Assembly: GCF_964188315.1 (NCBI RefSeq)
Contig: NC_135661.1
Location: 44,826,001-44,890,000 of the forward strand
From: Podarcis muralis
Taxonomy: Eukaryota
Length of the DNA: 64,000 bases
Reading direction: 5' to 3'
The notes beneath the pieces are model-generated. The model did no database searches, had not been told where the DNA came from, and saw only the letters and a list, made by a program, of their open reading frames with translations. The stretch's first letter is position 1. Each line of letters opens with the position of its first letter. Positions 7,153-41,281 of this stretch are shown here, one piece after another. Position numbers and translations under genes: made by a program.

Positions 7153-7908
7153 AAGTCAAACAATAGGAGACTGTTAAAAACAGGAATTAAAAACATTCAA
7201 AAGATAATGTTCCTGTGTGCTGGTGGAGATCTTGAATTTCACTCAGATTTCTACAGCAGAGCTGTTGCTATCTAACCACTGTGATCAAAGAAGTGCATTC
7301 AATATTTGAGGCTGAAAGCAGGAGTTTCTCCCCAGAAAGGCTGCTGTGTGTTTGGACTATATTTTTAAAGGGAAACAACATGCAATAATGCAAAACAGCC
7401 CTGAAGATGCTTTGGTGCCCTGAAGATGCTTTGGACTACAATTCCCATCAGTTCTAGTATCACAAGATTGTGCCAGGTGGGGACTAGGGGAGTGGTAGTC
7501 CAAAGGGTACCGGCTTGGACAAGGCTGGTATGCATAATTTTAAAGAGAGAATAAAGTAGAGAAGCTTTCTCTGGTGATGGTGTCCACACTCTGTTTAAGA
7601 TGGCAAAAAATAATGTCAAATTTCACTGGAACCTATTTCCAAAAAGATTGCAGATGTAAGCTATTCCTATGTGCCCTCCCCACCGCAATCTTGGCCCACA
7701 AGCTTTGTCATCCTCCTCTTCCTCCTAGAGTCAAATTTCCCTGCCCAGTGTTTGTGGAAGCTGCCCAGCTGCCCCCTTGATTTTCATGGGCAAATAGAGA
7801 CACCGGGAGGGCTTGGCCTCTTCCTTCTCTTGTGTTTCATGTGGGCTTCTAGCCAGAGGAGCAAGCAGAGCCCTGCTGGGACCATCTTGCCTATCCTGCC
7901 AGACTGAG

Positions 7909-10900
7909 ATGGCGCTAAGGCCACAGGCAGCTCCCGGCTTAGCCCTGCTGCTCTGGGCCCTGTGCAGGACTGCTGTGCCTGTCACCACGCCTGAGGCTGT
8001 GCTAAGGGAGCACCAGGGACATTGCTACCAGCTTGCCCAGGAAAGACTGGCCTTTGAGGATGCCCAGGCTGCCTGCGGCCGATGGGGAGGGCACTTGGCA
8101 CAGGTCCCTTGGGAGCTGACAGGGATGTGGGGTGCTCTGAGAAGGAGGAGGGGACAGCTGAGAGGGCCCTCTGGGGTCTGGTGGGTCTCCAAGGGCCCAA
8201 CCAAGCCTGTGGTGGCAGGTAAGTCAGTCCTGTGTGGGCACCTGAGAGGGCTGGGCAGAGGCGGGGAGTGGTTTCTACTCCAGAAGGTGGAGGGTGCGTC
8301 CTGGTTTCTATCACAAAGGCCAGGTCTTGGAGTCCCTGTCCCTTTACACAGCTGGCTTGGCTGTGGTTAAAGGCTGGGATTTGGGGAGCCACATTGAGGG
8401 GCAGGGTGTGAAGGTGGGGGGCACTGTGCTGCAGAGAGCTGGCTCTTTTGCTTGTAGTGTAGAATTCTGCTTATTTTAATCTGCTCTGTCAAGAGCACAC
8501 CACCCCGCTTTGCCTACTGTGGTCAGATCTTACAAGAGGGCAAGGCCCTTGCCCTGCCCAGCTTACCACCATGCCCATGGCGGCCTCTTGTGTCTTTGCC
8601 CAGGAGCCCAGCCTCATCTGCATGGGGCTCACCAGCCCCCCACTTGCACCTTCCTCTCCAACCTGGGCCTGCTGCAGGAGGCTACCGGGCCCACCTGCCG
8701 CCAGAGGCATCCTTTCATCTGCGAATTTGGTGAGAGACCAGCTGGGCTGCCAGGGTGTGATCGTGACACCCCCACCCCAACCCATCCCTGAGGACAGAGA
8801 TTGGTCCTCCTGACCCAGGAGGGGCTCCCTTTCAGGATGGTCTTTTTTGCAGGTCCTGTGGAGGGAGGTGAATGCCCAGTCAAAGCGGCCAGGAGTGCCA
8901 ACAGCTCCAGGCCTTGGCAAAAACAGAAGGCTCGGCTGGTAGGTGATGGTGGCCAGTTCTCTTCCCTCCAAGTCCAAAGCAAATAGGCTTTCCCTCCTGC
9001 TGCCTGAAACCAAACTCCAGCGGATGCACCAAGGCAGAGGATGGGGGGGGGGGCAATAAAAACAGCCTGTCTGCTACCTCTTAGCCACCCTCCAGACAAT
9101 TCCTTTGGGCATGATTCCTGGGCAAGCTCCTAACAGGGAACCCTTTGCCCTGCCCCTTCCAAAAAAGCCTATTGGGTGACATATCCTACCTGGCACAGTG
9201 GCACTACTCTGTCCCACTCTTTTTTCTCTGTCTGCCACCAGGATCTGACCTCCATGGGGCGGAGGCCACAAAGGCTCATGCGGCGGTATCTGGGTGATAA
9301 GCAGAAGTACCCAGGTGATGTGGGGATTTATTGATTTCTGAAATAATGTATTGAAGAGTAGGTCATCTGCAAGTATAAGCAATTGTGAGAGGCTGATGAT
9401 CTTGGGTCATTCTGCTCATTTTAACAAACCCTTTAAATGCCCTAAAATAATATTTGTGGGGCTGAAAGGGGTATTTTATCTAATTTCACATAGACCATCT
9501 TTTCAAAAAGATTGTAGATGTCAGCACAACCAAAAGATATGCTTTCAACCTGCCTGTACAGAATTACAACTCCAACATTTACCAATGGTATTTGTTTAAG
9601 CTATGCCCAAGGGGCAAGTTACCCGTGATTAACTGTTTTTAACAAGTTTTATTTCAGATAAACTTTTATTACCATGTTCTACCTCCTCAATGGAAAGGGC
9701 CTGAAGCAATGCTCAGTATGAAAATAAGCAACTGTAATAATGTAAAACCAGGAATATAACTAGTAGCCAATGGATCCCTTATCATGAGGCTGATCCTTTT
9801 GCCAGTCAGGGCAGTGGTTTTCCCCTGAAAGGAAGCAGCTTGTTGTTGAAACAGGGCCACCGCAAGAAGTTTGTGTTTATGGAGGCCAAAGTGCCTGTTT
9901 CTGTGTAGGGGGACCCTGAGGGGAGAAAAGACTCTTGCTCATACTTCTCCTTTTGCCTCCAGAGACATCAGCAATCAGGGAGGCCTTGCAGGTTGTAGTT
10001 CCCAGGACCTGGCAGCAGGTAAAAGAGCCCCACTGGGAGGGAGTATCTGGGGAGGGGACCCCCTTCAGCCCAGCCCCATTGAGGCCCACAGCAGAGCCAC
10101 CAACCTTCCTCTGGCTCAAGACAGCCAACCTCTCTTCTGGTGGTTAGCACAGGCCTTATGTAGGCCGGGAACCCCTTATTCAGTGGTCTGCCTTTGCCTG
10201 ACAGCATTTGAACCCAAACTCCTGATTCTGCCTACAGGAGCTGCTCCAGCGACTGACACTGCCGGTGAACAATGGTGCCTGGAGTGCCTTTGAGCTGGTA
10301 TGACTGGGCCCACGGGGAGGGCGGATGCCCCAGAAGGGACTGAGCCCCAACTCCAAAGGCTGTGTAGCTCCCATGGGAAACCTGAAGAAAGAGTCAGGCC
10401 AAGTCCTGAGAGGCTCTTTCCGCCAAGAGAGGTGATGGGGAACATTTCATGGAAGGAGTCGAGGGACCCCCATTAGTGCTGAGGGACTTGGGCAATGCAT
10501 GGGCATGGAGGAACATTAACATCATGTGCCTTTGCATGCCAGGAAGAGGAGGTGGGGTTTCTTCAGGCTGTCAGTGAGGACCTGCTGAAAAGGAGGCCTC
10601 CAGCCTCCCCACACTGGCACCTCCTCAACCTCCTGGCAGTCCATGGCACCAGCCGGCTCCTGCAGGTCATTCTGGGCCCCTGCTCACCCAACATCAACAT
10701 CCAGGTGAGAATATACCACACTCCAGGGTGCCCTGGTGGGGAGGGACAGGCAGGTGCATGGGTCCCTTCATCCCATATTGCCCCATCCCATATTGCCCAC
10801 TTCTCCCTCCAGCAGCATGAGGCCCTGACTGGCACCCTGATGCAGATCCTTCACAAGCTGGAGCAAGCTCTTCAGGAACTGGGGGGCAGCAGTGATGCCA

Positions 10901-13900
10901 TCACCATGGAGACGCCTCTCATCAGCATCTATACACACAGGTAAGCTACCAGGCTTGCAGCCACTGGGTGACAGGGAAGGTAGGAAGCTTGACTGGTCTG
11001 GGAAGGGAAGGGAAGGGAGAAAGATCTTGGCAGTAAGTGTCCAAGAGAAAAGGCCATGAGGTAGCCATCTGCCCTTCCCTTATCATGGCTGCTGGCTCAC
11101 ATTTGCCTGGCTGTCATGCAGATTGGCAGCTCTCCTGGGGCGCCCTGGTCCCGGGCACCATCTGCTGTGCCCTGGCTCTAACCCTAACTCTCTTTGTCTC
11201 CCTGGCTCAGGGTGAACTCTTCCAGGCTGGGCAATATGGCGTTCTCCTTCCCTGGCAACCCATGGGCAGCCAGAGTCATTTTGCCAGAGCAGTCTGTGCT
11301 GGGAGCCGTCATGCCACAGAATATCCCAGTGGATGTGCAGGTCAGAGGGTGCAGGAGTGTGTGGCTGGCCCTCTCCTTTGGACTGGGCACAGTGGCCTTC
11401 CCTTTCCATGAAACGGAAACTTTCCTCTGCCAACTGCTGCTACCCCAGGAGGAGGAGGAAGGCAGAGAGCACCCAGGCAAGGAGTCGCTTGCTGTGCTGT
11501 GGAATGCACTGGGGCCCAGCACTCAGAAGTGACTTGGCTCCTTCAGATCAGCCTGACGATGCACCCAGAGGCATCTTCCCTCCCTCCCTCTTCTGGAGCC
11601 TCATGCTTCTGGGTTGGACTCCAAACATTTCATGAAACCCCTTTGCCACACCCCTGCCACCAAGGTCCCCTGACTTGGCCCTACTCAATCTACCTACCCA
11701 GTGCTTCCAACATTAAGCAGCCATGTTTCCAAAAATGGGCAGCAGAGCGTGAGGAGGCGGGGAGGAGCGCCCAGCCATCCTGCCAAGTGTGGCCAAGCAG
11801 GCATGGCTGGTGGGGCAGGCCCCCTCAGCAGTGGCGCTGCCCTTTCTTCTTCTCTCCCTCTCTCTTTAGATGGTGAGCTTCCTGGGCAGCCCCTTTCCCC
11901 CGAGCTCTGAGCAAGGGGTCACAGGAGCTGTAGCTGAACTGAACCTCCTTTCTGAGGGCAGCCAGATCAGCGTTAGCAACCTGAGCACCCCTGTCCAGGT
12001 ATGTCCTGCCTAGAGACTTTGGGCTGAGTGGAGCCTTCCTCCCTGTAAGGGGGTGGGCTATTGAGCATCTCCAGAGGGCAAGGACAGCCCTCCAGGATCA
12101 TTTCTCATGGCAGGATCTCATGGTGTGGAGATCAGCTGGATTAGCCACCAGGTAGGCCAGCCGCTTAGCCTGGGAGAGCCTACAGTACAGGGTCTGGTCT
12201 CTCTGTCATCATCCTTCCCTCTCTCCCACCGCAGCTCACCTCCATCAGTGAGGTTGCCTCTGCTCCAGGTGAGAGCCTGAGGCAGCTGCTCATCTCACTG
12301 TGGTGGTGCAGTAGCATCCAGTGATATCCTGCTCTCTTTTCTCATCCCAGATTTTCCTGCCCCGGGTTGTGCCTACAGCCCCTGCCGAGTCAGCTGCCTT
12401 CCTCTCTCCAGGGGAGGCCCTCCTTCTGACTGCGAACGTGACATGGACAGGGGGGTCCCTGATGATCCACGCTCACCTGGGCCCTGTGGGGCCTCTGGAA
12501 CTCTTCCTGCAGCCAAGCGAGCAACTCCGGGAGCCCATTGAGCCCAACGTCGGCCTGGGTATAGCAGGGGGACAGAAGAGCTGGCTTCTGCTTCCACTTT
12601 CGGCCTGGGGAGTGTGAGGACCTCTTCCTAAAATGGTTTCCCTTTTGTGTTGCCCGCCCCCATCTCCTGCAGATGGCTACACTTGGCTAGTGAAGGAGGA
12701 AGTTCTTCGTGACCTGAGAGGAGCCCTTCAGTTCCTGGTGGTGCCGCTGAACCTCTCTGCCAGCCAGGGTCCTGCCACCTTACATGTCAGCACCTATGGG
12801 ATCCAGTGCGTCTCCCGGCACCTGCCTGATGCCCAGTGGCAAGAGGCAGGCTGCAAGGTGAGTCTTGGCGTTCAAGAAACAAGGGAATCTGGGTAGCTTG
12901 CGCTCCCTACTGCCGGAGGCAGGGAAGAATCAGAATCTGGTCCTTAAAAACACTTCTATCCCATTTCAAGGCCAGACTGCTGCTTCTTTATTTAAAGCAT
13001 CTGGATCTCTGTTTTGTGAGAAATATCCAATGTGATCTGCTGCCCAGAAGCACCCTTAATCCCACCCTGTTTGCAGGTAGGAGAGAGCAGCAGCCTGGCG
13101 GAAGTCCACTGCCTCTGCACCCACCTCTCCTTCTTTGGCAGCAGCTTCTGGGTGGCGCCAGTCCAGCTGGATGTGGTGCGCACAGCAGAGTACTTTAGCC
13201 AGGTGAACAAGAACCCGGTTCTGGTCGTGGTCCTGGGAGTCGTCTATGCCCTCTACTTGGTGGGGGTGGCCTGGGCCCGCTGGTTGGATACACGCCCCCT
13301 GCACCAGGTAAGTTGCTGGGGGGTGAGAGGGCCAGAGGTAAGGGGGGGGGGGTCTGGCAGCAAGCAGCACAAACCCACAGGCCCTTGGCAGCTCTTAGGT
13401 GGTGATACTCCCAGAAGGGCATGTCATTCAGCAACAGCCACCATTTGGAGACTTGAGCTCTTGGAGGGTTCTCCAGCTGCTCTCCCACGCCATGTGGAGA
13501 GGAAAGGACTCTGATCTCCTCACCCCCCCACCCCAAAAGGGTGTGGCTGGCTAGTGGCGGGGAAGGCTTCTTCTTTGCTACAAATGGTCATGACTGCATT
13601 TTGCTCTCTATAAACATACAGCTGAGTGAGATGCAGCTAACTCTGTTCTGTCTAACGATTCCATGTGGATTTAAGGTTTGCATATCTCTTTGCCAGCAAA
13701 AGAGATCCCCTTATTCTGGTCTTCACTGGGGCCAAGTGGGAAGGACAACTGTATGTATGGGGCTTCAGCACTCTCTGCTCTCCTGCGCTGCTCCGTGGCA
13801 GAGCATGACCCTAGAAACGCCACCCCTCACACCCCTCTCCCTCTCCCAGGCAGGGCCAGCCCTCCTGTCCGATGATGATCCCTGTGCCCAGTACGGCTAC

Positions 13901-16900
13901 CTGCTCCAGATCTGCCTGCATGGGCAGCAGAAGGCCCCCGGAGGCAGCCCCTGTGTGAGTGGTCTGCCCTGAGTGATGGAGGGGGTGGGGTGGGGTGCCT
14001 GGTCTTTGCCCCAGAGCTCACCCAGCCCTTTCATCTCCAGCAGGTCTGCATCTGCCTGCAGGGATCGTCTGGTGTCAGCAAGCCTCGGCGCCTGCCCCTG
14101 GATGCCAGCCTCTTTCTCCTACGGGAGCCATACCCACTGGGAGAGCTCCAGAGTATTTGGTTGTGGCAGGAGCCCCACTCCGCCCCACAGCTGCCCTGGT
14201 CAGTCTGCCCATAAGTAGGGTGGGTGACATCCCACTTGGAGACATTGTGCTGGCATGCGGACACTGCCCACCTCTCATGGGGTGCCAGCCTGCTCTGCTG
14301 GACATGCCACAATTCTCCCTCTCTCTGAATGGGGCAGAGGTGGTTATTGTGTCAGGGTGACCATCCTCAGGCATCTGAGAGGAGGCGGGGCTGGGGGGGA
14401 GGTCAGCACACCTGGCACTTATCCAGCAGGGAGGCCTCTTGCCTCTGCCTGGCAGGACTTTCTTCCAAGTGGGGCACTAGGAGCACCAGCCTCCTGCCTG
14501 GCACTCACTACCCATCCCCTTCCCTCAGGCATACCGCCCACATCACAGTGCGAGACCTGCAGCAAAGTAGGAGGTTCCATTTCTCTTGCCAGCCGTGGCA
14601 CGTCCCAGCAGCAGGGGCCCCACACAGCACCGCCCAGCATTTCCTAGCAGCTCCACAGCACCAGCTAACAGCATTCTGGTAGGCTTACCAAGAGACGGGG
14701 GAGTCTGTTTGGGTGTCCTCAGCCCCCACCTGCCCACTGTGCATGAACTTATCAGGGATCTCTGAACCACCTTCTCCCAGGCAGAGCTGGAGACTCCATC
14801 TGTCTTCCCCCTCTGGCTCTCCCATAGCCTGGCCTTAGGTCCTGCTCCCACCCATCTATCTACCACTCTCTCTGCAGGCCCATCTTCCGGCAAAGGACTC
14901 TGAGCGGTCTTCGGGAGGAGCACACAGTGCTGACAGTGCTGCTGACCCGGACAGGCCACGGGCGGCCCGTCACACGGGTCCAGGGCCTCTCCTGCGGCTT
15001 CTGCCTCCTCCTCTGCTCTGCCCTTGTCAGCCTCATGTTCTGGGAGGTGCCCCATGATTCACCCGAGCTCCTGAATGTTGGTAAGGGTTGTGCCACATGG
15101 GATATCTCCCAAGGGCCACTGGCATGGAAAAGGGGGCTGTGCAACTCCTCTGCTCCAACTTCTGCCAGTGGAGGAAAGTCCCTCCTGCCACAACTGGAGG
15201 GACAAACGCAGTCATACCCTTTGGGCCGGCAGGAGGGACATTCATGTATTAGGACTTCAGAAGAGCCTGGGTGCAGCTAGATCAGGCCAACTGCAGGTGG
15301 GATCTTCTCACACAATGGCCACCCGATGCCTCCTGGGAAGCCCACAAGCAAGGCTCCTCTCCTACATTTGATCCCCCACCCCCTGAATCTAGAGATATCC
15401 TGCCTCTGATTGGGCAGGTAGCAGTTGGTGCCTCCTTCCAGCTTCCTTGGGGCACAAAGAGTAGTGACTGGTAGGTCCACTTGCAGGCACTTTCCCCCCC
15501 TGTTGATACACAGGCAGCTGCTTCTCCCTCTCCTGGAAGGACATCATGATCAGTGTGGAGAGTGCCTTGATTACCTTCCCCGTCAACTTGCTCCTTGTAT
15601 TCATCTTCCGCCACGCTGAACCACGCAAGAGCCATGCAAAGCCCGGCCTGGCAACGGCTGTGCCCAGTGCCCCTGCCAGCCCAACAACCCTGGACACTGT
15701 GCATGAGGTAGGGACAAGAGCTCTCCAGGACCCAGGACATTTTCCCCATTGTGCCTCCCCTTGGAATAAGGTCAAGGCTGAGCTGGCAGTGGACAAGAAC
15801 CCCCACCCGATCCCCAGCTACCTCTCCCCCAAGCCCCAAGTCCCCCAGGATCCTTCTTGCACCAGTGAACTTAGTCCCAGGGAGACATTTTTGCATTTGC
15901 AGATACAACAAGCACTGGCTTGCCAGATATTTTTCTCTGTGGCACTTATGGGATGGCTTTTAATAGGTAGGAGAGGATATGTTAATGGTAATTTATCCCT
16001 CCAGGTGCCCACATTTGTGGGTTGAACATACAAGGAGATCAGCTTATCGCTTCGTTTAAAACACAGGGCTGAGCAGAGTTCAAAGTCTCATCCTCAGCAG
16101 AAAAATAGAAAGTATAGGAAAATGCTGTGAAGTAAAATACATGCAGGCAAAATGCTTATATTTACAGTATGAACAGCTTGAGGCATGTGGCCAATGCTGG
16201 AGTGATAGGATATATGTCTGCTCCATTGCTGGTTGAAGAGAAAAGAGAGAGGGAAGGAACAGGAAATACCTTGATTCTTCATTCCCAAGAGAGGAGGGGA
16301 AATGACCCCACACAGAACCATCTCTACCAATGACATTTCTATGGTCCGAGTCTGTCTTTCAATAATGTGACCCTATGGTCTTAACCCCTTCACATGCTAA
16401 CTCACAAAAATATGCATTGTTAGATTTGGCTGCAAATCTCCCACAGCACTTCTCCCATCTGCTACATCTTCTTGTGCCCAGCTTTGCCCACCTTACCCTC
16501 AGCCTGTTGGGTGCATTTGTGCCCCAGTCGCCTGCCACTCTCCCGTCTACCCATGCTTGTCTTTCCCTCCCTAGAGCCTGCGCGGGGCAGTGGAGACGCT
16601 GAGCAAAGCCAGCAAGCAGAGCCAACAGCTGCTACATCCCGACATGGACCTTGAGGAGCTTCTGCAGTGGCTGGCTCGTTTTATCCACCCTGATCCTGGG
16701 GAGGAAGAGGAGGCAGCAGGTGAGAGCCCAGCCATGCCTGCCTGCCTGCCTGCCTTGGGCAGCCCTGCTAGACTCCCAGAGGATGGTGACACTGTGGTTT
16801 CTGCTTGCAGGGAGGGAGCCCAAGATCTCCAGTGTGGCACCCAGCCCTGATGCGCTGCACCAGACCTACTGCAACCGCTACCTCCTCCTGAAGCTACGGC

Positions 16901-18177
16901 ACATTTCCCGTCTCCTGGGGGAGCTGGAACCAGTCTCGACAGCCAAGCACCCTCCGGCTCTGCAGCAGCGCGTGGAGGAGATGGCCAGGCGTCTTGAGCT
17001 AGCAAGCCCCATCCGGTCTCGCTCCATGTAGGTAGCTCAAACAGGCTCCGTGAGCAGGCAGGGAAGCCTACCCTGCAGAGCCTCTTCCTCATGCCTTCCT
17101 CTTGTTCCTCCACAGCCGAAGGTGGCACTTGCCCTGGTGGGGCACCTGGGTGGGGTGGGCCCTGCTAGTCTCCCTCAGCGCAGTGGCCACCTTCTTCTCC
17201 TTGCTCTATGGCTTCCACTATGGCAAGGAGAGCACCGAACGCTGGCTCATCTCCACTGCCATCTCCATGGGCCAGGCTCTCTTCGTCCTGCAGCCTCTCA
17301 AGGTACTTCCCAGCCAGGCTGAGCAAACCCAGCATTCCTGGGGGGGCCTTCTCACGGGAGGTCAGGTTGCCAGACCTCTAAGTCTGATCTGAAGTCTTCA
17401 GGTTTGCCTAGTACCCTCCAGGTGGCAGGTGAAGGGCTTGAATTGCTAGATGGGTGAGAGTTTCAGTGGGGTGTGTGGGTGTGTGTACGTGTGTACACAG
17501 AAGACTGTGTATAGAGCATGTACACTTTGGACCAGCAGGAGCTGGATGCAAATTATAGCATAGACACTCTGGGGGACTACCTCCACTCTTCTCCTAATTA
17601 ACCTCTGTCTCTAGGACCCTTGTGACTATACCAGGGTCTGTGCCCCTGACACCACCAGGGGCAGCCCCTAGGTCTCAGGTTTGGGCCCTGAAATCTCAGG
17701 GTCTGTGATACTCCTCAACTGGCAACCCATAGGGGAGGGGACATCTCAGCAGCAGCAGCAGAAATCACGGTGCACATACTTCTTCCTCATCTCAAGTATG
17801 TGTCTGCCACCTGCCTGCCTGCCTGGGACAGGTGTCTGGCATTGGAGCACTGCAAACACCCACTGCATCTCCTCTCTTCTTCCCATGAATTTCAAGGGGG
17901 TGGGGGAGAAATTAACCAAAGCACCCTCACACATACACCAGTTTGTTGTGGTGTTTTGGCACAAAGTGAGGGGCTTGGCTCATCTGGAGAAAGGGAAGCC
18001 TACAGATGCTCCCTCTGTTTTATGGATGGGGGGGGGGCAAAATGGCTGCCGATCCTGCCCATCCCTCTTCTCCCATGAAACCCACTGCAGGTGATAAGCT
18101 TTGCCATCTTCTGTGCCCTGATACTGAAGAAAGCAGAGGATGAAGATGAGGCAGCCCTGGACCTGGAAGACCGGTAA
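7909..18177 (+). CDS. Divergent PKD1L2-like polycystin-1 family protein truncated after TM5 (signal peptide, C-type lectin, GAIN/GPS, TM1, degenerate PLAT, TM2-TM5); ~1109 aa, 22 exons
   Basis: Predicted exons 7909-8218, 8604-8729, 8853-8938, 9242-9314, 9963-10018, 10238-10297, 10543-10704, 10813-10940, 11211-11340, 11870-11998, 12351-12558, 12673-12857, 13077-13307, 13850-13954, 14041-14198, 14529-14678, 14878-15080, 15514-15707, 16575-16719, 16811-17027, 17116-17302, 18091-18177. All are GT-AG, phases chain, the total is 3330 nt with no internal stop. Motifs: MALRPQAAPGLALLLWALC, GHCYQ...AQAACGRWGGHLA...HPFICEF, CLCTHLSFFGSSF, LPWWGTWVGWALL...LYGFHYGKE...WLIS...QPLKVISFAIFCALILKK. Exons 3-6 are less certain. 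Confidence 0.85.
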
Positions 18178-19507
18178 AGGGAGGAAGGAGGCTTGCAGAA
18201 GTTGAGAGGCAGGATGAATTGAAGGAGGGAAAGGGGCTTCCCCAGAGAGGGTTGGGGCCTGGAGTGCCTCCAAGTAGAGAAGGGCAAAGGTGGCACTGAG
18301 AATGCCCTGCACCCACTGCAGAAAACAAACTCAAGTTCAAAAAATTCCTTTCACGACTGTGGCCTGGCAAGAGGAAGGGTTTTCAGTACTACGTCTGTTC
18401 CCTCTTCCACCTCCCGTAAGGGAAGGTTATGCACACACAGAGAAGAATCACGCCTCTCCACTTTGGATTGGCATGACTGGGAGCCCACCTGGACCATTCC
18501 TCTGCTGCTTTGAGTGGCCCGGCAAGGCATGCAGGCTTGGTGGAGGAATCCAGTTGCTGGTGTGGGCACCTCTGGTTGCCAAGAGCAGGTAGCCCAGGGC
18601 CCGCTCTGGGAGACTCAGAGGATGCAGAGTGGCTACACTAGGCATCTCCTGGGCTTGCTAAACAGGAAGGAAGCACGTTGATCTGAAGCCTGCAAGGGCA
18701 GGACTGGGACTGTCCCCTGTGGAAGGGGAGAAGATTGGGGAGGGACTAAAAGGTAGTGACTGGCATGTGCACAGTGGGGGTGGAGAGGAGTCACCACCCA
18801 GTGGCAGAGCAGCTGCTTTGCAGGCCCCCTGCCTTCCTAACTCTTGACACTCCCCATTAAAAAGATCTCGAGTAGTCTCTCTTTGCTCGTGGCCTTGAAA
18901 CGCCACTGCCAGTCAGACTAGAGCAGACATATTAGGTTACCAGTAATTTAACCATCCTAAGGGACACTGCAGCTCCAGGACTGGGGCCAAGGGAGTAGAA
19001 AATATGCTGGGAAGCAGTCCTAGGGCCCCATCCTGACCCACGTCTTCGACCTCTGTGATTGCAGGCTGTGCTCTTTCCAGTGATGGGAGGACAACTTTCT
19101 GCGAGGCCACCTTGGCTTTTGCCACGCCATGTGCCCAAGACCTCCAATCAGCCTCTCCAACATGATGTCACCCACACCTGTACAAAGGCCAGGACCATCT
19201 CTCTGGAGGAACGAGAAGGCACAGCATGGGAGGGGGACAGCAAAGTCCCATTCTGTAACCTGCCAATGGAGCCAACCCTGAACTCACCGAGTGTTGAAAG
19301 AGTTGGGATGCAACTCAGCTTGCTGAGGGTTTGCATGAGGTTAAAGTGGATAGAGAAGGGAACCTCCAAGATTGTCTAACTGCCCTTTGATCTCTGTGAT
19401 GACCTTTCCTTTACTATTAGACTGATATTCTTAGGGTTCCTGACAGTGACCAAACTTCCTGCTTCCCCCTCTTCCTTCTGAAGCTGAAGGAGAGAGGACA
19501 TCTATGG

Positions 19508-20683: not shown

Positions 20684-21144
20684 ATCTATGGATGTATCTC
20701 TGCCGAGAGTAAAGAGCAAGCATGACTCCCTTGTAGCTTTAAGATTAATTAGCTAAAACTAGGAACTCTTTTCTATCCAAGTATATATTTCTTATAATAA
20801 ATGGAGCTTTATTATATTCCAATTTTAAGTACTCTGTGTGTGATTGCAATGAAGGCAAGCCTCCTCTCCCCAGTAAGAAGTCCATGTGTGCTGTGTGCTA
20901 TCTTGCAAAGTGATTCAGCACTAGGCGCGGCCCACACCGAATAAATGGCAGGCTACAGTTCAGTGGTGTCCGTGGAAGCTCTCTTTCACTCTCTGAGGAC
21001 TTCATGATTGGCTTCTCAGGGGCCCAGGCCCAGATCCAGACACCCATTCCCACTTCAAACGCCATGGTGGCCCCCTGGCAGTGACATGCAGTAAATTGTA
21101 AAACCTCATGTGGCTGGCTGAAGACTCGCCAGCACTTGTCCAGA

Positions 21145-21295
21145 AGAATCATAGAACTGTAGTGTTGGAAGGGACTGTGAGGGTCATCTACTCCTACCTC
21201 CTGAGGAATCCCACTAGCACAACCTCCCTGGAAGGAGGGTCCCTTCGCCTCCGTTTAGAAACCTCTAATGAAGGGGAGTCTGCCACCTTCCTGTC
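21145..21295 (-). mobile_element. CR1 LINE 3' fragment
   Basis: AGAATCATAGAACTGTAGTGTTGGAAGGGACTGTGAGGGTCATCTA... resembles the reverse complement of the CR1 3' end with its TTCTATGATTCT terminus. Confidence 0.65.
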
Positions 21296-21661: not shown

Positions 21662-21668
21662 TATTAAA
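21662..21668 (+). promoter_or_regulatory. TATA-like element upstream of PKD1L3 start codon
   Basis: TATTAAA 47 nt before the ATG at 21709; position is only suggestive. Confidence 0.25.
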
Positions 21669-21708
21669 GGGGTGGCCCCGGGCCAGCTTGCTCCAAAGAG
21701 GGAGCGGC

Positions 21709-24700
21709 ATGGGGATCCCTATAGGGATGTGGCTCTGGCTCTGGGCCGCACAGGTCTCTTCGGAGGAATCGGAGCCCGCCTGCCTGCCTGTGGCAGGAGA
21801 GGACTGCTATCGGCTGCTCCGGCGGCCACAACCCGCCTTGGGTGCAGTGATTTGGTGCGGACGATCCCACGGCCGGCTCCTCCACACGTGGAACCAGCAG
21901 ATCCAGGACGCCCTGCGCGACCGCCTGGACGACAGGAGCAAAACCTGGATCGGGGCTGCAGCAAAGGCGCTCCCAGAAGTGAGCCACCCTGGCAAAGGTG
22001 AGAGCGGGGCGGGGGCGCAGAGGCCCAACAGCAGCACCGCAGAAGAGGGGCAGCAGCAGCCAATTCCAGTATACTCTCCCGGGATGTGTGTTATTCCCCA
22101 CTCAGCATCTCTGACTCGCCCAGACGCCAAACCCCTCAGGGCAAGACCGCCACCCCCCCTACACCAGGTGGGACCACCGTCTTCTCGTGGGGATCGAGGC
22201 GGGGCAGCCAAGCTTCTCACTTCAAGGGCCCAGCCAGGCCCTGCAGACCCTTCCCTCCGTCAAGGGACCCCGCCCACCAGCGTTTCAAGGACACTCAGGG
22301 TGGCAACCCTCCTCCCATGCCAATCCTCGCTGCTGATGGCTCAGCTCTGCAGTCTGTGACAGGCAGTCAAGGAGTGGGGAGGGTTAAAAATCATAATAAT
22401 GCAAGGCTGTCCGAGGGTTTGCTACCAGGCACTCACTCACCCTATGCAAAGGCTCCCCTTAAACCACTTGCCACCACTGGGAGACTCTCGTCTGGAGAGG
22501 GAGCGGAGCCCTACAGGACAGCCTCAGCCGGAAAGCCTTATCCTAATAAAAACAAACAACTGGCGGGCTGGTGCTGAGTGTGGGGTGGCGGGGAAGAGGG
22601 ATAACCGTGTCTGACGGCGGCGCCTACTCTCCGCAGACCACTGCAAAATCCTCGTCCGGAATGGGGACCAATTCTATACCAGGAGGGAGGAGTGTGACCA
22701 GAAGCACTTTTTCATCTGCCAGTCTGGTGCGTGAGTCTGCCCGCCCCCCCCCCCGGGGGTGGGAGTTCGCGCCCTCATTCACGGCCTCGTTCGCGGCCTC
22801 CAGCTTCAAAGAGCGAGAAGGACCTCGTGGCTGAGCTGAGGATGAGACTCTCTGGAAGCACGCCTCTGGAAGCACCCCCCGCGAAGCACGCCCTTTCGAG
22901 GTGGCTGCAACCCCGGAGGCAGGGCCAGGGCCAGGCTCTCCCGAGGCGGCTGGGCTGGGCCGTCGCAGGTCCTAGAACCATCCCTGCCGCCCCGGAAGCG
23001 CCGCTTCCATGAATCCTCCCGAGCTCAACCCCTTCTGCTCTCTGTCCGCTACAGGCCCCCCGAGGACGCCCCGAGAGACTTCCACGCCCTGGGTGGTAAG
23101 TTCCCGCCAAAGCAGGTGCCTGCGCAGCCGTCGAACAGGAACGGGCGAAGGCTCTCTAGGCCGCCGTCGCTGCGCAGCGCCCCCTGGGCTGACTGCAGCG
23201 CACCACCGAGCAGCCGGCCCTGGTGACACTCTCTCCCTGTCTCCCAGAGAACGACCTGCCAGCATTTGACGTGCGGCCCGACGGAGGCGACGCCCATTCT
23301 CACCGAAGAGCCGACGGCGACTGCTCCTCTGAGCGCCCAGCCCTCCGCCGCGACTCCTCCGCCGCCCAGTGCTCCTCCAGGAAGCAGCACAGTTCGCCAG
23401 CCGACCACCGCTGACATCCAGTCATTCCTTGGGACCAGGCCAGAACTCGGCACTCCCCGCCATCCGCCGAGCAGCCCCAAGTCGGCATCCAGCACCTGGC
23501 CAGCCAGCAACAGCAGCCAGACTCACCCCAACTCTCGGACCTCAGCCCCAGAGCCCAGCACTCAGCCGCTGCCCACCAGCAAAACCACCTCGGGGGGTAC
23601 CAAAAGCCACGAGTCCAACACCAGCCCGGACTCCTTCACCTTCAGCCCTAGAGACTTCCCCCCTGAGGACCAGGGGAAGGTAGGGAGACATCTGGACTGG
23701 CACCTGCCCCCACCCTGGTGGCACCTTGTCCAGACAGGCTCTCCTCTCTCTCCGTCCCATACCCCACACCCTGCTCCGGAGATGCCAGGTGGGGGTGGGG
23801 TGTGCGTTGCAGGATTCTTCCTTTGCACCTGGAAAAATCAACGCTGAGGTGCAGATCAAAGATGAGTGTGACTCCTATGTGATTTCCCAGGGATCCAAAG
23901 TCACTTAGTGAGTGATTTCCAGACTGGTTTTGCCCACAGCAGAAAGGGGGGCAAGTGGCTCTGGGGAGGTGTGGGGGGATGTGTGGCTCCCTCCCGCCTA
24001 GCCTCCTTTTCAGGTCTTCCCCCTATAGGGTAGAGTAGCCTTCCTAGAATTAGAGATTTAGCGATAAGCTCTACTTGCAGGCTTACTGACAGCGTAATAG
24101 GGCAACCAGGCCCCCTTCTCCCCCAGCCCCTCTCACTCAGGGTCTGTCCCACAGGCCCTAGAGAAGGTGCTGCACCAGTTCAGCCAGGCTGTGCAGACCC
24201 CAGGCCACCCTATTGCACTGGAGCAGGCAGCCCGGATGCTGGAGAATTTGACAAATTTCCATGCTCTGCTCTCAGACGATGCCCAGGTACTGGCATGTGG
24301 CAGGGAGGGTGGGTGGGTGGGTGGCACCCCTGATCTAAGGGTCTGTCCCCTGCGGCCTATTCTCCCAGTCCTTGGTTGAACCAGGCTCTACCCAGGCTAT
24401 GTACAGAGGCAAGCCTGCCGCTTGGCACAGCCAGCCTCACCCTTGCACCCCCAAATCAGCCCCGCCAGATGACCAGCCCTGCCTTGTTCCTACAGGCCTC
24501 TGCCAGCCAGGCACTCCTCTCCCTGAGCTCTCAGCTACTGAGGGACCACCCTGCCAGCAATGCCTCCTGCCTAGACCTCGCATCACAGGCTCTTTTCCAC
24601 GCCCTCAGCAACCTCCTCCAAGCCTCAGGCAGCCAGACACCCAGCTTCGGCCCGCAACAGGTGGGGGAGAAAGAGGACCTGCAGGGGTCGGGTGGAGGAA

Positions 24701-27700
24701 GCTATTCTGACCTGCTCCTTCCTCCTTCACTCTTTCCTAGGCCAGCAGAAGGATGGGGTTGCCAGCTCAGGCCTGCTGCATGGCTGGGTCTCATTCTGAA
24801 GGCACCCCCTTTTGTCCAGGCCTTCCCATTGGTCTGAGCCCATGGGAAGGGAGCTGAGCTTCCCGGCTCCCCACCCTGGCTCTGCCCAGCTCCTGACCAC
24901 ACCTGGCCTTTCTGCAGCAGGAACCAAAGGTCCTGGAAACAGCATTGGAAGCCCTTCCTCTGATCCAGACGGGGCTCCTGTTGGGAAGCTCCACCATGGA
25001 GGAATCCACAGTAACTGTGGTGTCTTCTGTGCTCAGCACCACCCTCAGCAGGTACCAGTCTCCTCTCTCCTAGGCACTGAAGAAGGGGGGGGGGGCTTGC
25101 TCAGGGCAGCTGGGGAACTGAATGAATTGTTTGGTTGCCAATTACCTATTGGAATCCTTTTGGTACGCAGAGTAAGACATTGTTCAGAGAATGCATCTTG
25201 GTTAGGGGACAGACTTTTATGAGTTACAATCTCACACACAGGGATGTTTGTAGTTAAGATAAATAATAAAGGAGTCTATTACATTATTTTTAAAATTATT
25301 ACTACATTTATAACCCACTTTTTTCTCCAAAAAGCTCAGGATAGCTCACAGACTTCTCCTTTTTTCCATCTTATTCTCATAACAACCCTGCGAGGTAGGT
25401 TGGGGCTGAGAGATAGTGACTGGCCCAAAGTTACCCATTGGGTTTCATGGCTGAGAGGGGATTTGAACCCTGGTCTCCCACGTCCATGTCTTGCACTCTA
25501 ACCACATAGTTGGATAGAAAAGTTCCAAGTTCTAGCCTAACAAGTCTGTACTAGAGCATGGTAGCCATGCTGGCTCCTGTCTTATCTCAGAGGAGAATTC
25601 TTCTTGGAGAGAGAAATGTGAGAGGAGCAGGAAGTTGTGAAACAGAGTGCAGCCTGAGAATATCAAAAGAGATAGAGAGGTGAGCTGAAGAGGTTAATGA
25701 CACAAAGGTAGTCTGGGAATCTGGAGGTCTCGAACTCTGTTCTATCTGTCCTAACCTACGCAAGACCCCTCTTCTGAAAATGGAGTTGCAGTCAAACTTT
25801 CAACAGTAACCCCTCTCCCCACTCCCTACCAGGTGTGACAAAGCCTCCCTGCCCCATGCCTCCTTCCACCTGCTTCAGCCAAGGGGCCTGAACGTAACCT
25901 TCCCATCCAGCTCTGCTCTGGAGCCAGTTCTGAGCCAGCACCCTCAAGTACAAGTCCAGGTAAGGTGGTAGTGGCTTGCTGTCCACTGGGTCCTTGTAGG
26001 GGGACATAGCGCAGGGCTGGCAGGGCGTGGAGGTGGGGCAGAGGGCACCCCCACAGCTCGCTCTTGCTCTCATCTTCATTCTAGGTGGCCTCCTTTGCAT
26101 TCAATCCTTTCCGGCACCTGGATGGGAAGCCGATCAATAGGACGGCAAGTATCGCTCTCATGGCCAGCGAAGAGTCCATCGGTGTCCACAATCTTGCAGA
26201 GGAAATAGAGGTGAGAATGGATACTGTACTGGGAAGTTCTCTCATCAGGGGGGACTCTTCTCTCAGCACCCAAGTGGCATGGAGAAGCAGCGCTGTCCAA
26301 GGTCCAGCTCTGGATCAGAGATAAGCACTTTGTGCTGTATGGCCTGATGGGAGACAATATGTGCTCAAGGACCAGTGGGGGGACGCACGGACTGCAGGGC
26401 TGACCATAGGCATTCTGTCTGCTTCCAGATTGGGCTCAGTGCCGAGGCTAGTCCTGAGGCCCCTCACACTCACTTGACTGGCAACGTCAGGAACTTTGAC
26501 ATTGTGGTAAACATCACATCAGTAGAGGATGCCCTGCTAGTATCGGTGGAATCCAGCACAGTGGTCCAGATCACCTTGCACCTGGGCCTCCAACCTGAGC
26601 CCAACAAGAACAGCAGCCTCCTCAACACCACCCTGCCCAGCAGCGGATGGCAAGAGGGTGAGGACTTGTTAGAAGGAGGCTAGAGGGCAGGTGCTGCTTT
26701 GGGACTTCCTATTGGAGCATCTGACTGACCTCTAGGAGAATAGTGCTGGACTAGAATGGCCATTGGCCTGATCTTCTTATGCTCATACATACAACACAAT
26801 GCTGCATGTATCCCCTTAAAAGTAAGTCTCATTGGAGTTCAGTGAGGTAACTCTCAGGTAAGTGGGCATAGCTTTGAGGTGTTAACTTCACCGGCTGTTC
26901 TGGGTTTCAGCCATAAGACATGACCTGTATGGCAGGCTTCCTCAAACTCGGCCCTCCAGATGTTTTGAGACTACAATTCCCATCATCCCTGACCACTGGT
27001 CCTGCTAGCTAGGGATCATGGGAGTTGTAGGCCAAAAACATCTGGAGGGCTGAGTTTGAGGAAGCCTGCTATATGGGAACAATTTACCTCTATAAATAAA
27101 AAGGGAAAGTTGCAAAAGTATACAGATTGAATCAGCTGTGTTTCAATTATTTAATTGCCCATTCAATTCATTTAATTGCAAATTACCATGATGTAGTGGT
27201 CAGATTTGCACTGTGGGAAACATCAATGGGAAATTTGATTTAAATCGCTTAGTTAAATCAGCCCGTTTCTTCATTTACATAATTGACCAAACCACTTTGA
27301 TTTAAATTTGTGCACCTGGGAGTAGGCACAGAGGGAGGGGCTTGAGGAGCTGGGGCCAGGCAGGACTGTGTCCCCCAGTGGGGGAAGGTGTGGGTGTGGT
27401 CCCTCTCTGCTCTCTTTGACTCACTGCTCTTGCTTCAGAGGGTATCTACACATGGGTGATTCCTCCAGAGGAGCTGCAGCATCATGGCCTGGGCACCTAC
27501 TACATCTCTGCAGAGGTGGCTCCCCTCTCTCAGGGCCCCTGGAACCTCTCCATTCACACCATCATCTCTGGATGCTACTACTGGTCCAGCCAGCATCAGG
27601 CCTGGAGAAGTGATGGATGTCGGGTATGCAGTAGGGTCAACCAGGCCAGAGGGCTGCAGGGCATGAAGCAAGCCTTTGCTTCCATGCTGAGAGAAAAAAA

Positions 27701-41238: not shown

Positions 41239-41281
<43 letters not shown>

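What the first reader, a model, noticed from the sequence alone, without database searches (positions are those of the whole stretch)
7909..18177. Intact polycystin-1 paralog that stops after TM5: a channel-less lectin-GAIN-5TM receptor next to PKD1L3
Seen: 22 GT-AG exons chain in phase to ~1109 aa with no stop or frameshift, which argues against a decayed pseudogene. The ORF ends at ...ALILKKAEDEDEAALDLEDR*, and I found no TOP or S1-S6 exons between 18178 and the PKD1L3 start. Established: in PC1-family structures TM1-5 plus PLAT form an N-terminal membrane domain, while the last 6 TMs form the subunit that assembles 1:3 with PKD2 or PKD2L1. Inference: the product is an N-terminal-domain-only polycystin resembling an adhesion-GPCR-like sensor. 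It cannot supply a pore subunit and could act as an independent receptor, decoy or modulator of PKD1L3/PKD2L1 signalling. I know of no such gene at the human locus, where DHODH neighbours PKD1L3.
Basis: partly seen in the sequence, partly recalled or inferred. Interest (0 to 1): 0.88.

Follow-up and report, generated by a model that had tools for sequence, protein, structure and literature searches.

The report
Channel-less polycystin gene beside PKD1L3
This is a real, transcribed wall-lizard gene encoding the front half of a polycystin-1-type protein (sensor domains plus five membrane helices) without the channel half, but it belongs to an old vertebrate gene family already annotated in over a hundred species and previously dismissed in fish as a decaying PKD1L3 remnant.

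Summary
RNA contigs confirm every junction from exon 5 onward.

It overlaps the exon 22 donor. Transcripts splice from 18173 to a 23rd exon at 19065, and the ORF ends five codons later (TGA 19081-19083), giving 1114 aa. The protein still ends about 20 residues after TM5. No channel exons lie before the full-length PKD1L3 gene (21.7-38.5 kb).

The gene is not a novel lizard paralog:
- RefSeq annotates it in Podarcis, Lacerta, Zootoca, Pogona and Sceloporus, in frogs, and in more than 100 ray-finned fishes. It is auto-named "PKD1-like 2".
- All these proteins end after TM5.
- England et al. 2017 called the fish copy a "partial pkd1l3" remnant.

My tree and synteny (bowfin, frog, lizard) indicate a separate paralog that arose in tandem with PKD1L3 before ray-finned and lobe-finned fishes split.

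Against Lacerta the whole ORF is intact, with dN/dS 0.36.

Caveats:
- In lacertids the lectin and PLAT domains fall below Pfam thresholds.
- Exons 1-4 have no RNA support.
- The function is inferred, not shown.

The parts
7909..19083 (+). Coding span of the channel-less polycystin-1-like gene ('gene A'): 23 exons, 1114 aa with the 73-nt form of exon 4 (1107 aa with the 52-nt form)
   Evidence: Model built. Start ATG, stop TGA and donor GT checked. All 23 exons, their splice sites and the ORF are conserved in Lacerta agilis.
7909..8218 (+). Exon 1: start codon, signal-peptide-like hydrophobic stretch (aa 7-25) and the first half of a compact C-type lectin-like domain
   Evidence: Read from sequence; hydropathy. 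Homologous to Phrynocephalus model aa 10-68, and the same N-terminus appears in the Zootoca RefSeq protein. Pfam Lectin_C reaches only 13 bits. No RNA contig found.
8604..8729 (+). Exon 2: second half of the lectin-like domain (C...C...PFICEF)
   Evidence: 53% identity to Phrynocephalus aa 88-136. No RNA contig found.
8853..9314 (+). Exons 3 (8853-8938) and 4 (9242-9314, alternative donor at 9293): linker. Exon 4 is not a multiple of 3, so skipping it breaks the frame from exon 1
   Evidence: RefSeq isoforms X1-X3 of P. muralis start at an ATG inside exon 3 in another frame and omit exon 4; that is read off the P0155 N-terminus shown and compared by eye with the exon 3 sequence. The Lacerta, Zootoca and P. 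raffonei models include the 73-nt exon 4.
9963..12857 (+). Exons 5-12: GAIN domain (helical subdomain A and beta-sandwich subdomain B)
   Evidence: Spliced joints 10018>10238, 10297>10543, 10704>10813, 10940>11211, 11340>11870 and 11998>12351. The 12857>13077 junction is inferred from a loose end at 13075. The 12558>12673 junction was read from the sequence alone and is conserved in Lacerta. In the AF2 model the top Foldseek hits are adhesion-GPCR GAIN domains.
13077..13307 (+). Exon 13: GPS motif (CLCTHL|SFFG, cleavage tripeptide HLS at 13110-13130), stalk and TM1 (13218-13274)
   Evidence: Pfam GPS 23.9 bits against a 22.5 cut-off on the identical RefSeq protein. TM1. A family profile matches polycystin-1 chain 6a70_B at E 4e-65.
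13850..14678 (+). Exons 14-16: divergent PLAT-like domain (9-residue deletion, canonical motif lost)
   Evidence: Joints. Pfam PLAT is not detected in lacertid proteins but is detected in the Sceloporus, frog and fish orthologs. The modelled beta-sandwich matches PLAT domains of Rab6IP1, lipoxygenases and lipases. Local dN/dS is 0.19.
14878..15707 (+). Exons 17-18: TM2 (14984-15040) and TM3 (15549-15617)
   Evidence: Joints, hydropathy, paralogous to gene B 30421-30498 and 30951-31052.
16575..17027 (+). Exons 19-20: helical cytoplasmic loop between TM3 and TM4
   Evidence: Joints; model helices. All three same-species RNA runs carry an in-frame AGG insertion after 16931.
17116..18173 (+). Exons 21 (17116-17302) and 22 (18091-18173): TM4 (17150-17206), TM5 (17279-18123, split by intron 21) and the acidic tail KKAEDEDEAALDLED
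   Evidence: Joints 17027>17116 and 17302>18091; hydropathy. This is the most conserved block of the family.
18174..18177 (+).
   Evidence: Contigs leave the genome here.
19065..19083 (+). Start of exon 23: completes the Arg codon, adds LCSFQ, then the native stop TGA (19081-19083). The 3' UTR continues for an undetermined length
   Evidence: Loose ends of X1 and X4 at 18171 and of X3 at 17028 match 19063-19092. The tail RL(C/S/G)S(F/L/H)Q ends the Lacerta, Zootoca, Sceloporus and Anolis proteins (Pogona ends ...GPGSLQ).
21709..38479 (+). Neighbouring full-length PKD1L3 gene ('gene B'), with its own signal peptide, lectin domain, mucin-like region, GAIN/GPS (HLT), PLAT, 11 TM and channel domain
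   Evidence: It sits inside the tetrapod PKD1L3 clade.

Best explanation
Gene A is the wall-lizard member of an old, conserved family of 'half' polycystin-1-like genes. Shown here: the gene is transcribed and correctly spliced. Its ORF is kept intact and under purifying selection. The product has a GAIN domain with a GPS motif, TM1, a PLAT-type domain, TM2-5 and a short acidic tail, and it ends there by design. Proteins of the same build, ending about 35-50 residues after the start of TM5, exist in other squamates, in frogs and in more than 100 ray-finned fishes. The family forms its own clade beside PKD1L3. It lies in tandem upstream of PKD1L3 in lizard, frog and bowfin, so the duplication predates the split of ray-finned and lobe-finned fishes. 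The fish 'partial pkd1l3' is this gene, not a decaying PKD1L3. Inferred: the protein inserts with its N-terminus outside. It is probably cleaved at HL|S in the GAIN domain, and presents PLAT, the TM3-TM4 loop and the acidic tail to the cytosol. Lacking the TOP domain and the last six helices, it cannot take a subunit position in a PKD2-type tetramer. It most likely acts as a pore-independent membrane receptor or scaffold, possibly regulating PKD2-like channels in trans. Its persistence in teleosts, where no channel-bearing pkd1l3 has been found (England et al. 2017), argues that it does not depend on PKD1L3.
For: Gene model and splice sites. Spliced RNA contigs and the exon 22>23 junction. No channel exons before gene B. 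Exact identity (916/916 aa) to a P. muralis RefSeq protein; names. Lacerta agilis locus colinear, all exons, splice sites and the ORF intact. dN/dS 0.36 (bootstrap 95% interval 0.26-0.53), TM1-PLAT 0.19, TM2-5 0.29. The neighbouring PKD1L3 ectodomain gives 0.445. Same truncated build in bichirs, frogs and plaice. 115 fish proteins carry the motif before TM5 and end a median of 47 residues after it, and those listed carry Pfam GPS and PLAT but no PKD_channel. Squamate and frog orthologs. Careful tree: family clade 100/99, separate from tetrapod PKD1L3 (100/99); taxon names. AU tests reject a tetrapod-only duplication (p 0.023) and a bowfin-only duplication (p 5e-50). Synteny: bowfin A-B-Ist1, Pelobates DHODH-A-1836 aa gene, Lacerta A-PKD1L3, window A-PKD1L3-IST1. 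Fold: GAIN, PLAT and polycystin-1 matches.
Against: No function has been tested for any member. In lacertids, Pfam detects only GPS, barely; PLAT and Lectin_C fall below threshold. The squamate stem branch is long (0.85, against 0.44 for frogs). Exons 1-4 have no RNA contig. The RefSeq isoforms of this species lack the signal peptide and lectin part. dN/dS of the first 200 residues is 0.65 from few sites. Contigs show isoforms that skip exons 14-18 or 21-22. Expression looks low, and the raw-read RNA run gave no reads. In polycystin-1 the stalk is thought to act on the TOP/pore region, which is absent here (from my own knowledge, not checked), so an adhesion-GPCR-like mechanism is not assured. 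The AF2 model has only moderate confidence (pLDDT 70) and was built from an alignment that includes canonical family members.
Confidence: 0.72

Rival explanations
1. The gene is functional, but the main product in the wall lizard lacks the signal peptide and lectin-like domain. Transcription or translation would start further downstream (ATG in exon 3 or 4, or a start near exon 5), so 'lectin receptor' is wrong for this species even if the GAIN-5TM part stands.
For: No RNA contig covers 7881-9690 in runs that carry exons 5-23; one other run holds 6% of the words. P. muralis RefSeq isoforms of 936-938 aa begin in exon 3 (other frame, exon 4 skipped) or at a Met in exon 4. A contig under the second species label runs unspliced from 9751 into exon 5. 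Lectin_C scores only 13 bits. dN/dS of aa 1-200 is 0.65.
Against: Exons 1-4, their splice sites and the frame are intact in Lacerta. The Zootoca RefSeq protein uses exactly this N-terminus. The Phrynocephalus, Pelobates and fish orthologs have a homologous lectin N-terminus. A GAIN domain needs a signal peptide to reach the outside. The same unspliced contig also retains the next intron, so it looks like pre-mRNA. Coverage is patchy everywhere in the 5' half.
Confidence: 0.25
2. In lacertids the gene is a transcribed copy on its way to decay, and its products have no function.
For: The PLAT and lectin domains are degenerate. The squamate branch is long and has a biased composition. Exon-skipping isoforms and partly spliced contigs are seen. 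Depth is low. Variants between the RNA runs and the window are 9 non-synonymous to 7 synonymous.
Against: The 1114-codon ORF is intact, with 22 conserved GT-AG introns, in both Podarcis and Lacerta. dN/dS is 0.36 with an interval excluding 1, and is lowest in the supposedly degenerate PLAT region at 0.19. This matches the constraint on the neighbouring PKD1L3 ectodomain. Both skipped-exon isoforms stay in frame (exon lengths). Sceloporus, Pogona and Anolis have intact annotated orthologs with the same C-terminal peptide.
Confidence: 0.1
3. Gene A is a variable 5' module. Read-through transcripts would splice exon 22 onto the channel exons of PKD1L3, giving an 11-TM polycystin with an alternative N-terminal half.
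For: Exon 22 joined to the AG at 33586 (exon start 33587) would read in PKD1L3's frame. A public bowfin gene model (P0013) joins the A-type front half to the channel exons of the downstream copy. Both genes are on the same strand, about 2.6 kb apart.
Against: Both contigs that leave exon 22 go to 19065 and meet a stop after five codons. That terminal peptide is conserved in lacertids, Sceloporus and Anolis. PKD1L3's own acceptor is 33583, which would be out of frame. Teleosts keep the short gene although no channel-domain sequence was found at the locus in the four teleosts examined by England et al. (PMC5318412), and the fish proteins listed carry no PKD_channel. The bowfin model skips a complete second front half, so it is best read as a chimeric prediction. 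Contigs drop rare variants, so a minor isoform is not excluded.
Confidence: 0.05

Closest known systems
Teleost and gar 'partial pkd1l3' (England et al. 2017, PMC5318412; zebrafish 1083 aa with Lectin C-type, GPS and PLAT, no polycystin-cation-channel domain)
   Same: Same domain order and length, same end after TM5, and same chromosomal neighbourhood (the DHODH / PKD1L3 region). The plaice protein of this type, which has the same length and Pfam layout as the zebrafish protein described in the paper, groups with the lizard gene in one clade at 100/99 support.
   Different: The paper read it as a remnant of pkd1l3 being lost and did not analyse it further. Here it coexists with a complete PKD1L3 in lizard, frog and bowfin and forms a separate clade, so it is a distinct paralog. 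The lizard protein has diverged more, with lectin and PLAT below Pfam thresholds.
PKD1L3 (the gene immediately downstream, 21.7-38.5 kb)
   Same: Paralogous front half exon by exon: lectin, GAIN/GPS, TM1, PLAT, TM2-5. It is the sister group in the tree.
   Different: PKD1L3 goes on to the TOP (polycystin) domain and six more helices with the PKD_channel domain. Gene A stops about 20 residues after TM5. It also lacks the mucin-like Ser/Thr/Pro region, and its GPS reads HLS rather than HLT.
Polycystin-1 N-terminal transmembrane domain in the PC1/PC2 complex (PDB 6a70 and later entries)
   Same: A family profile matches chain 6a70_B at E 4e-65 over GPS-stalk, TM1, PLAT and TM2-3. The model aligns over about 530 columns with 9l0w_A.
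   Different: Polycystin-1 continues into the channel-like half that replaces one PKD2 subunit; gene A has none of it.
Sea urchin REJ proteins with few membrane helices (SpREJ1, SpREJ2; PMC1934368)
   Same: They are PKD1-family members that carry lectin, GPS and PLAT-type modules but lack the large TM and channel domain, so channel-less family members are precedented.
   Different: They are an invertebrate sperm-specific lineage with REJ domains and only one or two TM helices. They are not orthologous, and no 5-TM module was reported.
Adhesion GPCRs
   Same: They have a GAIN domain with an autoproteolysis motif directly before the first membrane helix. The best structural matches of the ectodomain are latrophilin and BAI GAIN domains.
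   Different: Gene A has five helices instead of a class-B 7TM bundle, has a PLAT domain in the first cytosolic loop, and gives no 7tm Pfam match.

Membership tests
Polycystin-1 (PKD1-like) family | GAIN domain ending in a GPS motif just before TM1 | tested here: met
   Pfam GPS scores 23.9 bits against a 22.5 cut-off on the RefSeq protein identical to the window product. The conserved Cys/Trp/HL positions are kept. The top Foldseek hits are GAIN domains.
Polycystin-1 (PKD1-like) family | Autoproteolysis at HL|T/S | not testable with these tools
   The tripeptide HLS is present at 13110-13130. Cleavage itself needs a western blot of the expressed protein.
Polycystin-1 (PKD1-like) family | PLAT/LH2 domain in the loop after TM1 | tested here: inconclusive
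   Pfam PLAT is not detected in the lacertid proteins at E<=0.01, but it is detected in the Sceloporus, Pogona (weak), frog and fish orthologs. The modelled region matches PLAT folds, but the model's alignment contained canonical PLAT sequences.
Polycystin-1 (PKD1-like) family | Eleven TM helices with a TOP/polycystin domain and a PKD_channel domain in the last six | tested here: not met
   Only five TM helices were found. The ORF stops at 19081-19083. There is no channel homology in 17303-21700. Orthologs have no PF08016 or PF20519.
Short lectin-GPS-PLAT-5TM family ('partial pkd1l3' of fishes) | Protein ends shortly after TM5 with an acidic tail | tested here: met
   The window protein ends 37 residues after the QPLK motif. 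Other squamates end at 31-41 (the shortest, Lerista, is a partial model), frogs at 35-48, and 115 fish proteins at a median of 47.
Short lectin-GPS-PLAT-5TM family ('partial pkd1l3' of fishes) | Orthology: one clade that follows the species tree | tested here: met
   The clade of bichirs, bowfin copy A, plaice, frogs and lizards has 100/99 support. Alternatives with lineage-specific duplications are rejected.
Short lectin-GPS-PLAT-5TM family ('partial pkd1l3' of fishes) | Position in the DHODH - PKD1L3 - IST1 neighbourhood | tested here: met
   Window: A, PKD1L3, IST1. Pelobates: DHODH, A, 1836-aa gene. Bowfin: A, B, Ist1. DHODH itself was not looked for in the window.
Short lectin-GPS-PLAT-5TM family ('partial pkd1l3' of fishes) | N-terminal C-type lectin domain | tested here: inconclusive
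   Lectin_C scores 36.9 bits in sturgeon, 20.2 in Pelobates and 13.4 in the lacertid N-terminus, against a 22.6 cut-off. The cysteine pattern is kept.
PKD1L2 (the name given by NCBI's pipeline) | Groups with mammalian and teleost PKD1L2 | tested here: not met
   The PKD1L2 clade (Peromyscus, Triplophysa, Channa, Electrophorus) is separate from the clade that holds gene A.
PKD1L3 orthologs | Groups with tetrapod PKD1L3 | tested here: not met
   The tetrapod PKD1L3 clade (goat, jerboa, newt, frogs, gecko, Hemicordylus, window gene B) excludes gene A at 100/99.
Adhesion GPCRs | Class-B2 seven-helix bundle after the GAIN domain | tested here: not met
   There are five helices with PLAT between TM1 and TM2, and no 7tm family in Pfam.

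The most novel reading that the evidence does not exclude
The short gene is a separate 'half-polycystin' paralog at least as old as bony vertebrates. It arose with PKD1L3 by tandem duplication, was kept in ray-finned fishes, frogs and lizards, and was not found here among mammals or birds, though that absence was not properly tested. The teleost 'partial pkd1l3' is its ortholog, and the true channel-bearing pkd1l3 was lost there. Its conservation would mean that the GAIN-PLAT-5TM module of polycystin-1 proteins has a function of its own that needs no channel half.
Probability: 0.5. Interest if true: 0.7.

Novelty: new member of a known kind. Interest (0 to 1): 0.5.

Why it matters
Whether the N-terminal membrane module of polycystin-1 proteins (GAIN, stalk, TM1-5, PLAT) signals by itself or only tunes the attached channel half remains debated in polycystic kidney disease research. 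This gene family is a natural version of that module without the channel. It has apparently been kept for more than 400 million years. It is present in zebrafish, where it can be knocked out, and it was set aside in the literature as a remnant. For genome annotation, these proteins are mislabelled 'PKD1-like 2', and some public models fuse them with PKD1L3 (bowfin, Pelobates cultripes, Phrynocephalus).

Tried and rejected
- Pfam on single stop-free exon stretches gave nothing useful, because the domains are split by introns.
- A PDB sequence search with the GPS exon alone found nothing. The family profile did find matches.
- The raw-read RNA run X17 had no reads on the stretch.
- The search for homologous proteins with the full P. 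raffonei protein returned only three hits, because of the candidate cap. Region-restricted queries worked.
- I considered A and B being one gene. I rejected this because B has its own signal peptide, lectin, GAIN, PLAT and TM1-5, and A's transcripts stop before B.
- I considered that bowfin has a full-length ortholog of A, which would imply repeated independent truncations. I rejected this because the bowfin locus holds two tandem front halves and the public model jumps from the first to the channel exons of the second.
- I considered the 9751-10015 contig to be an alternative first exon. It more likely reflects pre-mRNA, because the same contig retains the next intron.
- MetaClust protein P0065 looked truncated but groups with frog PKD1L3 and is a fragment.
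- Not done: a survey of birds, turtles, crocodilians, snakes, mammals, lungfish and coelacanth. Absence from my hit lists is not evidence of loss. I also did not look for DHODH upstream in the window.

Full report
**Observation**

The stretch is a eukaryotic gene on the + strand. Twenty-two exons between 7909 and 18177 chain in phase with no internal stop, and every intron is GT-AG.

**RNA evidence**

Public RNA runs of the same species hold 10-24% of the sampled words of 12900-18300, about what the exons alone would give. Laid on the window, their contigs give GT..AG joints at these positions:
- 10018>10238, 10297>10543, 10704>10813, 10940>11211, 11340>11870, 11998>12351
- 13307>13850, 13954>14041 (with a 3-nt alternative acceptor at 14044), 14198>14529, 14678>14878, 15080>15514, 15707>16575
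- 16719>16811, 17027>17116, 17302>18091

A loose end fixes 12857>13077. One junction, 12558>12673, has no joint in the contigs; I read it from the sequence, and its splice sites are conserved in Lacerta. One of the four runs carries a different species label and shows exons 7-11 spliced in a single contig.

The TAA overlaps the donor of exon 22 (ccg|GTAAAG). Contigs of two runs leave the genome at 18171 and continue with letters that match 19063-19092. The two mismatches are a C>T change at 18172 and a G>C change at 19068.

The junction is therefore 18173>19065, behind a good acceptor. In frame the ORF reads ...DLEDR LCSFQ and stops at TGA 19081-19083. The protein is 1114 aa, or 1107 aa with the shorter exon 4 donor.

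The conclusion that the protein ends about 20 residues after TM5 is unchanged. A third run joins exon 20 directly to the same last exon, and one contig joins exon 13 to exon 19. Both skips remove a multiple of three bases.

**Surroundings**

- tblastx of the gene against the rest of the window finds a second, colinear copy of the GPS/TM1, PLAT and TM2-5 exons at 27.8-33.0 kb.
- A fused Phrynocephalus model maps with residues 10-991 on 7936-17320 and residues 1028-2754 on 21640-38461.
- The downstream gene starts at ATG 21709. It has its own signal peptide and lectin domain, a Ser/Thr/Pro-rich stretch, GAIN/GPS with HLT, a canonical PLAT, and the channel half. It is PKD1L3.
- Channel-domain queries from six species hit only 33.6-38.5 kb and nothing in 17303-21700.
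- IST1 lies on the minus strand at 40.8-46.2 kb.

**The gene is already annotated**

An exhaustive profile-free search with the GPS/TM1 exon returned a 99% identical 940-aa protein and several 950-1120-aa relatives. The source names for these clusters are as follows:
- Lacertids: Podarcis lilfordi, P. muralis, P. raffonei (1107 aa) and Lacerta agilis, all called 'polycystic kidney disease protein 1-like 2'.
- Relatives of similar length: Pelobates fuscus, Rhinoderma darwinii, Erpetoichthys and Polypterus.

Residues 192-1107 of my 1107-aa model are identical, 916 of 916, to P. muralis XP_077787783.1, so the window is from the common wall lizard or something indistinguishable from it. The alignment shows that all these proteins stop at the same place, after TM5 and an acidic stretch. 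The distance from the GPS to the C-terminus is 561-600 residues in this group, against 1040-1230 in full-length relatives.

**Distribution**

A search with the bichir protein (GPS to C-terminus) gave 318 hits. The 120 listed are ray-finned fishes: sturgeons, gar, bowfin, tarpon, eels, herring, salmonids, carps, catfishes, cichlids and many others. They are typically 1000-1130 aa with Pfam GPS and PLAT, often Lectin_C, and no PKD_channel. The one exception is the bowfin model discussed below.

In 115 of these proteins the C-terminus lies a median of 47 residues after the QPLK motif at the start of TM5, and teleosts share a conserved tail.

A search with the lizard protein added Zootoca, Sceloporus, Pogona, Anolis, a skink and six more frogs, including Xenopus laevis. 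The Lacerta, Zootoca, Sceloporus and Anolis proteins end in RL(C/S/G)S(F/L/H)Q, that is, in exon 23. The splice into that exon and its stop are therefore old within lizards.

**Evolution**

I built a careful maximum-likelihood tree of the region from about 220 residues before the GPS to TM5. It has 34 rows and is rooted on amphioxus.
- The short genes form one clade with 100/99 support, and its internal order follows the species tree (bichirs; bowfin plus plaice; frogs; lizards).
- Tetrapod PKD1L3 (goat, jerboa, newt, frogs, gecko, Hemicordylus, window gene B) forms another clade at 100/99, joined by bowfin copy B and three cartilaginous-fish genes.
- PKD1L2 (mouse-like rodent, teleosts) and a lamprey gene lie outside both.

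AU tests reject a duplication confined to tetrapods (p 0.023) and one confined to bowfin (p 5e-50).

Synteny agrees:
- The bowfin locus carries a front half at 9270-15539 and a second front half plus channel exons at 24832-34532, followed by Ist1. The public bowfin protein P0013 is thus a chimera that jumps from the first copy to the channel exons of the second.
- Pelobates fuscus has DHODH, the short gene, then an 1836-aa gene.
- Lacerta has the short gene, then PKD1L3.

The duplication therefore predates the split of ray-finned and lobe-finned fishes. The tree would even place it before the split from cartilaginous fishes, but that node is weaker (91/96) and I did not sample for it.

**Constraint**

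The Lacerta agilis locus is colinear with the window at about 90% identity. All 23 exons map with AG/GT kept, with only two 3-nt indels, and with an intact ORF from the same ATG to the same stop.
- Nei-Gojobori dN/dS is 0.36 (bootstrap 95% interval 0.26-0.53; dS 0.085).
- By region: 0.65 for residues 1-200, 0.37 for GAIN, 0.19 for TM1-PLAT and 0.29 for TM2 to the end.
- The front part of the neighbouring PKD1L3 gives 0.445 for the same species pair.

The short gene is thus no less constrained than its full-length neighbour's ectodomain.

**Domains**

- On the identical RefSeq protein, Pfam finds only GPS (23.9 bits, cut-off 22.5). PLAT is missed in lacertids but found in Sceloporus, frogs and fishes.
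- The lacertid PLAT region has a 9-residue deletion and has lost the usual motif.
- Lectin_C scores 36.9 bits in sturgeon, 20.2 in Pelobates and 13.4 in the lacertid N-terminus, though the cysteine pattern of a compact lectin-like domain is kept.
- An AlphaFold2 model from a 28-sequence alignment (mean pLDDT 70) shows a helical plus beta-sandwich ectodomain, TM1, a beta-sandwich, and four further long helices.
- Foldseek matches the model to adhesion-GPCR GAIN domains, to PLAT domains of Rab6IP1, lipoxygenases and lipases, and to polycystin-1 in PC1/PC2 complexes.
- The family profile hits polycystin-1 chain 6a70_B at E 4e-65.
- Hydropathy gives a signal-peptide-like stretch and five TM helices.

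**How it probably works**

Shown: the build, the transcription, the conservation and the lack of any pore-forming part.

Inferred from what is established for polycystin-1 and adhesion GPCRs:
- The N-terminus faces outward.
- The GAIN domain likely cleaves itself at HL|S.
- PLAT, the TM3-TM4 loop and the acidic tail are cytosolic.
- The protein has no way to occupy a subunit position in a PKD2-type tetramer.

I commit to a pore-independent membrane receptor or scaffold that may regulate PKD2-like channels in trans. The best-conserved parts are the stalk, TM4-TM5 and the acidic tail. Teleosts keep the gene although England et al. found no channel-domain sequence at the pkd1l3 locus, so it cannot depend on PKD1L3. 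I hold the mechanism loosely, because nothing here tests it.

**Weak points**

- Exons 1-4 have no RNA contig in the runs that carry the rest; one other run holds 6% of the words.
- The RefSeq isoforms of this species start in exon 3 (another frame, exon 4 skipped) or in exon 4, so they lack the signal peptide and lectin part.
- A read-through splice from exon 22 to the AG at 33586 would be in frame with PKD1L3. I saw no such contig, but contigs drop rare forms.
- I had no read-laying runs left to test either point.

**Literature**

England et al. 2017 (PMC5318412) list a zebrafish 'pkd1l3' of 1083 aa with Lectin C-type, GPS and PLAT and no channel domain. They report similar loci in pufferfish, stickleback, medaka and gar, next to DHODH. 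They call these partial remnants, 'not bona-fide pkd genes', and did not study them further.

Mayeur et al. [quoted passage not shown] Channel-less PKD1-family proteins with one or two helices are known in sea urchin sperm (PMC1934368).

My three literature searches found no paper that treats the short vertebrate gene as a separate, conserved paralog coexisting with PKD1L3.

**Verdict**

Its end lies one exon further on. It belongs to a family that is already annotated and partly described. The modest new result is the reinterpretation: it is an old tandem paralog under constraint, not a decaying PKD1L3.

Noticed in passing
window 19508-20683: This stretch, just after the last exon of gene A and flagged earlier as a Pack-type hAT element, has no counterpart in the otherwise colinear Lacerta agilis locus (the alignment jumps from 19507 to 20684). 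It is therefore an insertion in the Podarcis lineage or a deletion in Lacerta. An ATTAAA at 19580 lies inside it.
   Followed up: partly
window 13307>16575 and 17027>19065: RNA contigs of run X3 show two exon-skipping isoforms: exon 13 to 19 (removes 810 nt, covering PLAT, TM2 and TM3) and exon 20 to 23 (removes 270 nt, covering TM4 and TM5). Both stay in frame. P. lilfordi has annotated 841- and 799-aa isoforms that may correspond.
   Followed up: partly
window 14041/14044: Exon 15 has a tandem acceptor 3 nt apart; different runs use different sites.
   Followed up: no
window 16931 and 18172: All three same-species RNA runs carry an in-frame AGG insertion after 16931, matching the longer Lacerta exon 20. 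Two runs carry C>T at a CpG in the last codon of exon 22 (Arg to Trp, as in the P. raffonei protein). These are polymorphisms or differences between populations relative to the assembled individual.
   Followed up: partly
L001 (Amia calva JAAWVP010002995.1) 9270-15539 and 24832-34532: The public bowfin protein MBN3299417.1 ('PK1L2, partial') is a chimera of two tandem genes. It takes the front half of the short gene, then jumps over a complete second front half to the channel exons of the PKD1L3-type copy. The Pelobates cultripes (2401 aa) and Phrynocephalus forsythii (2765 aa) models likewise fuse the two genes end to end.
   Followed up: yes
window 40795-46246, minus strand: An IST1 ortholog (up to 93% identity per exon to the bowfin Ist1 region by tblastx) lies downstream of PKD1L3, as in bowfin. 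The last 18 kb of the window were not examined.
   Followed up: partly
window 33583/33587: The PKD1L3 exon after TM5 has two AG acceptors 4 nt apart. PKD1L3's own frame needs 33583, while exon 22 of gene A would be in frame with 33587. This may be coincidence.
   Followed up: partly
window 7708-7726 and 11445-11462: Short 18-19-nt matches to long, deep RNA contigs (2.8-3.2 kb, depth 25-35) that otherwise lie elsewhere. They are probably a repeat or low-complexity match, not part of this gene.
   Followed up: no
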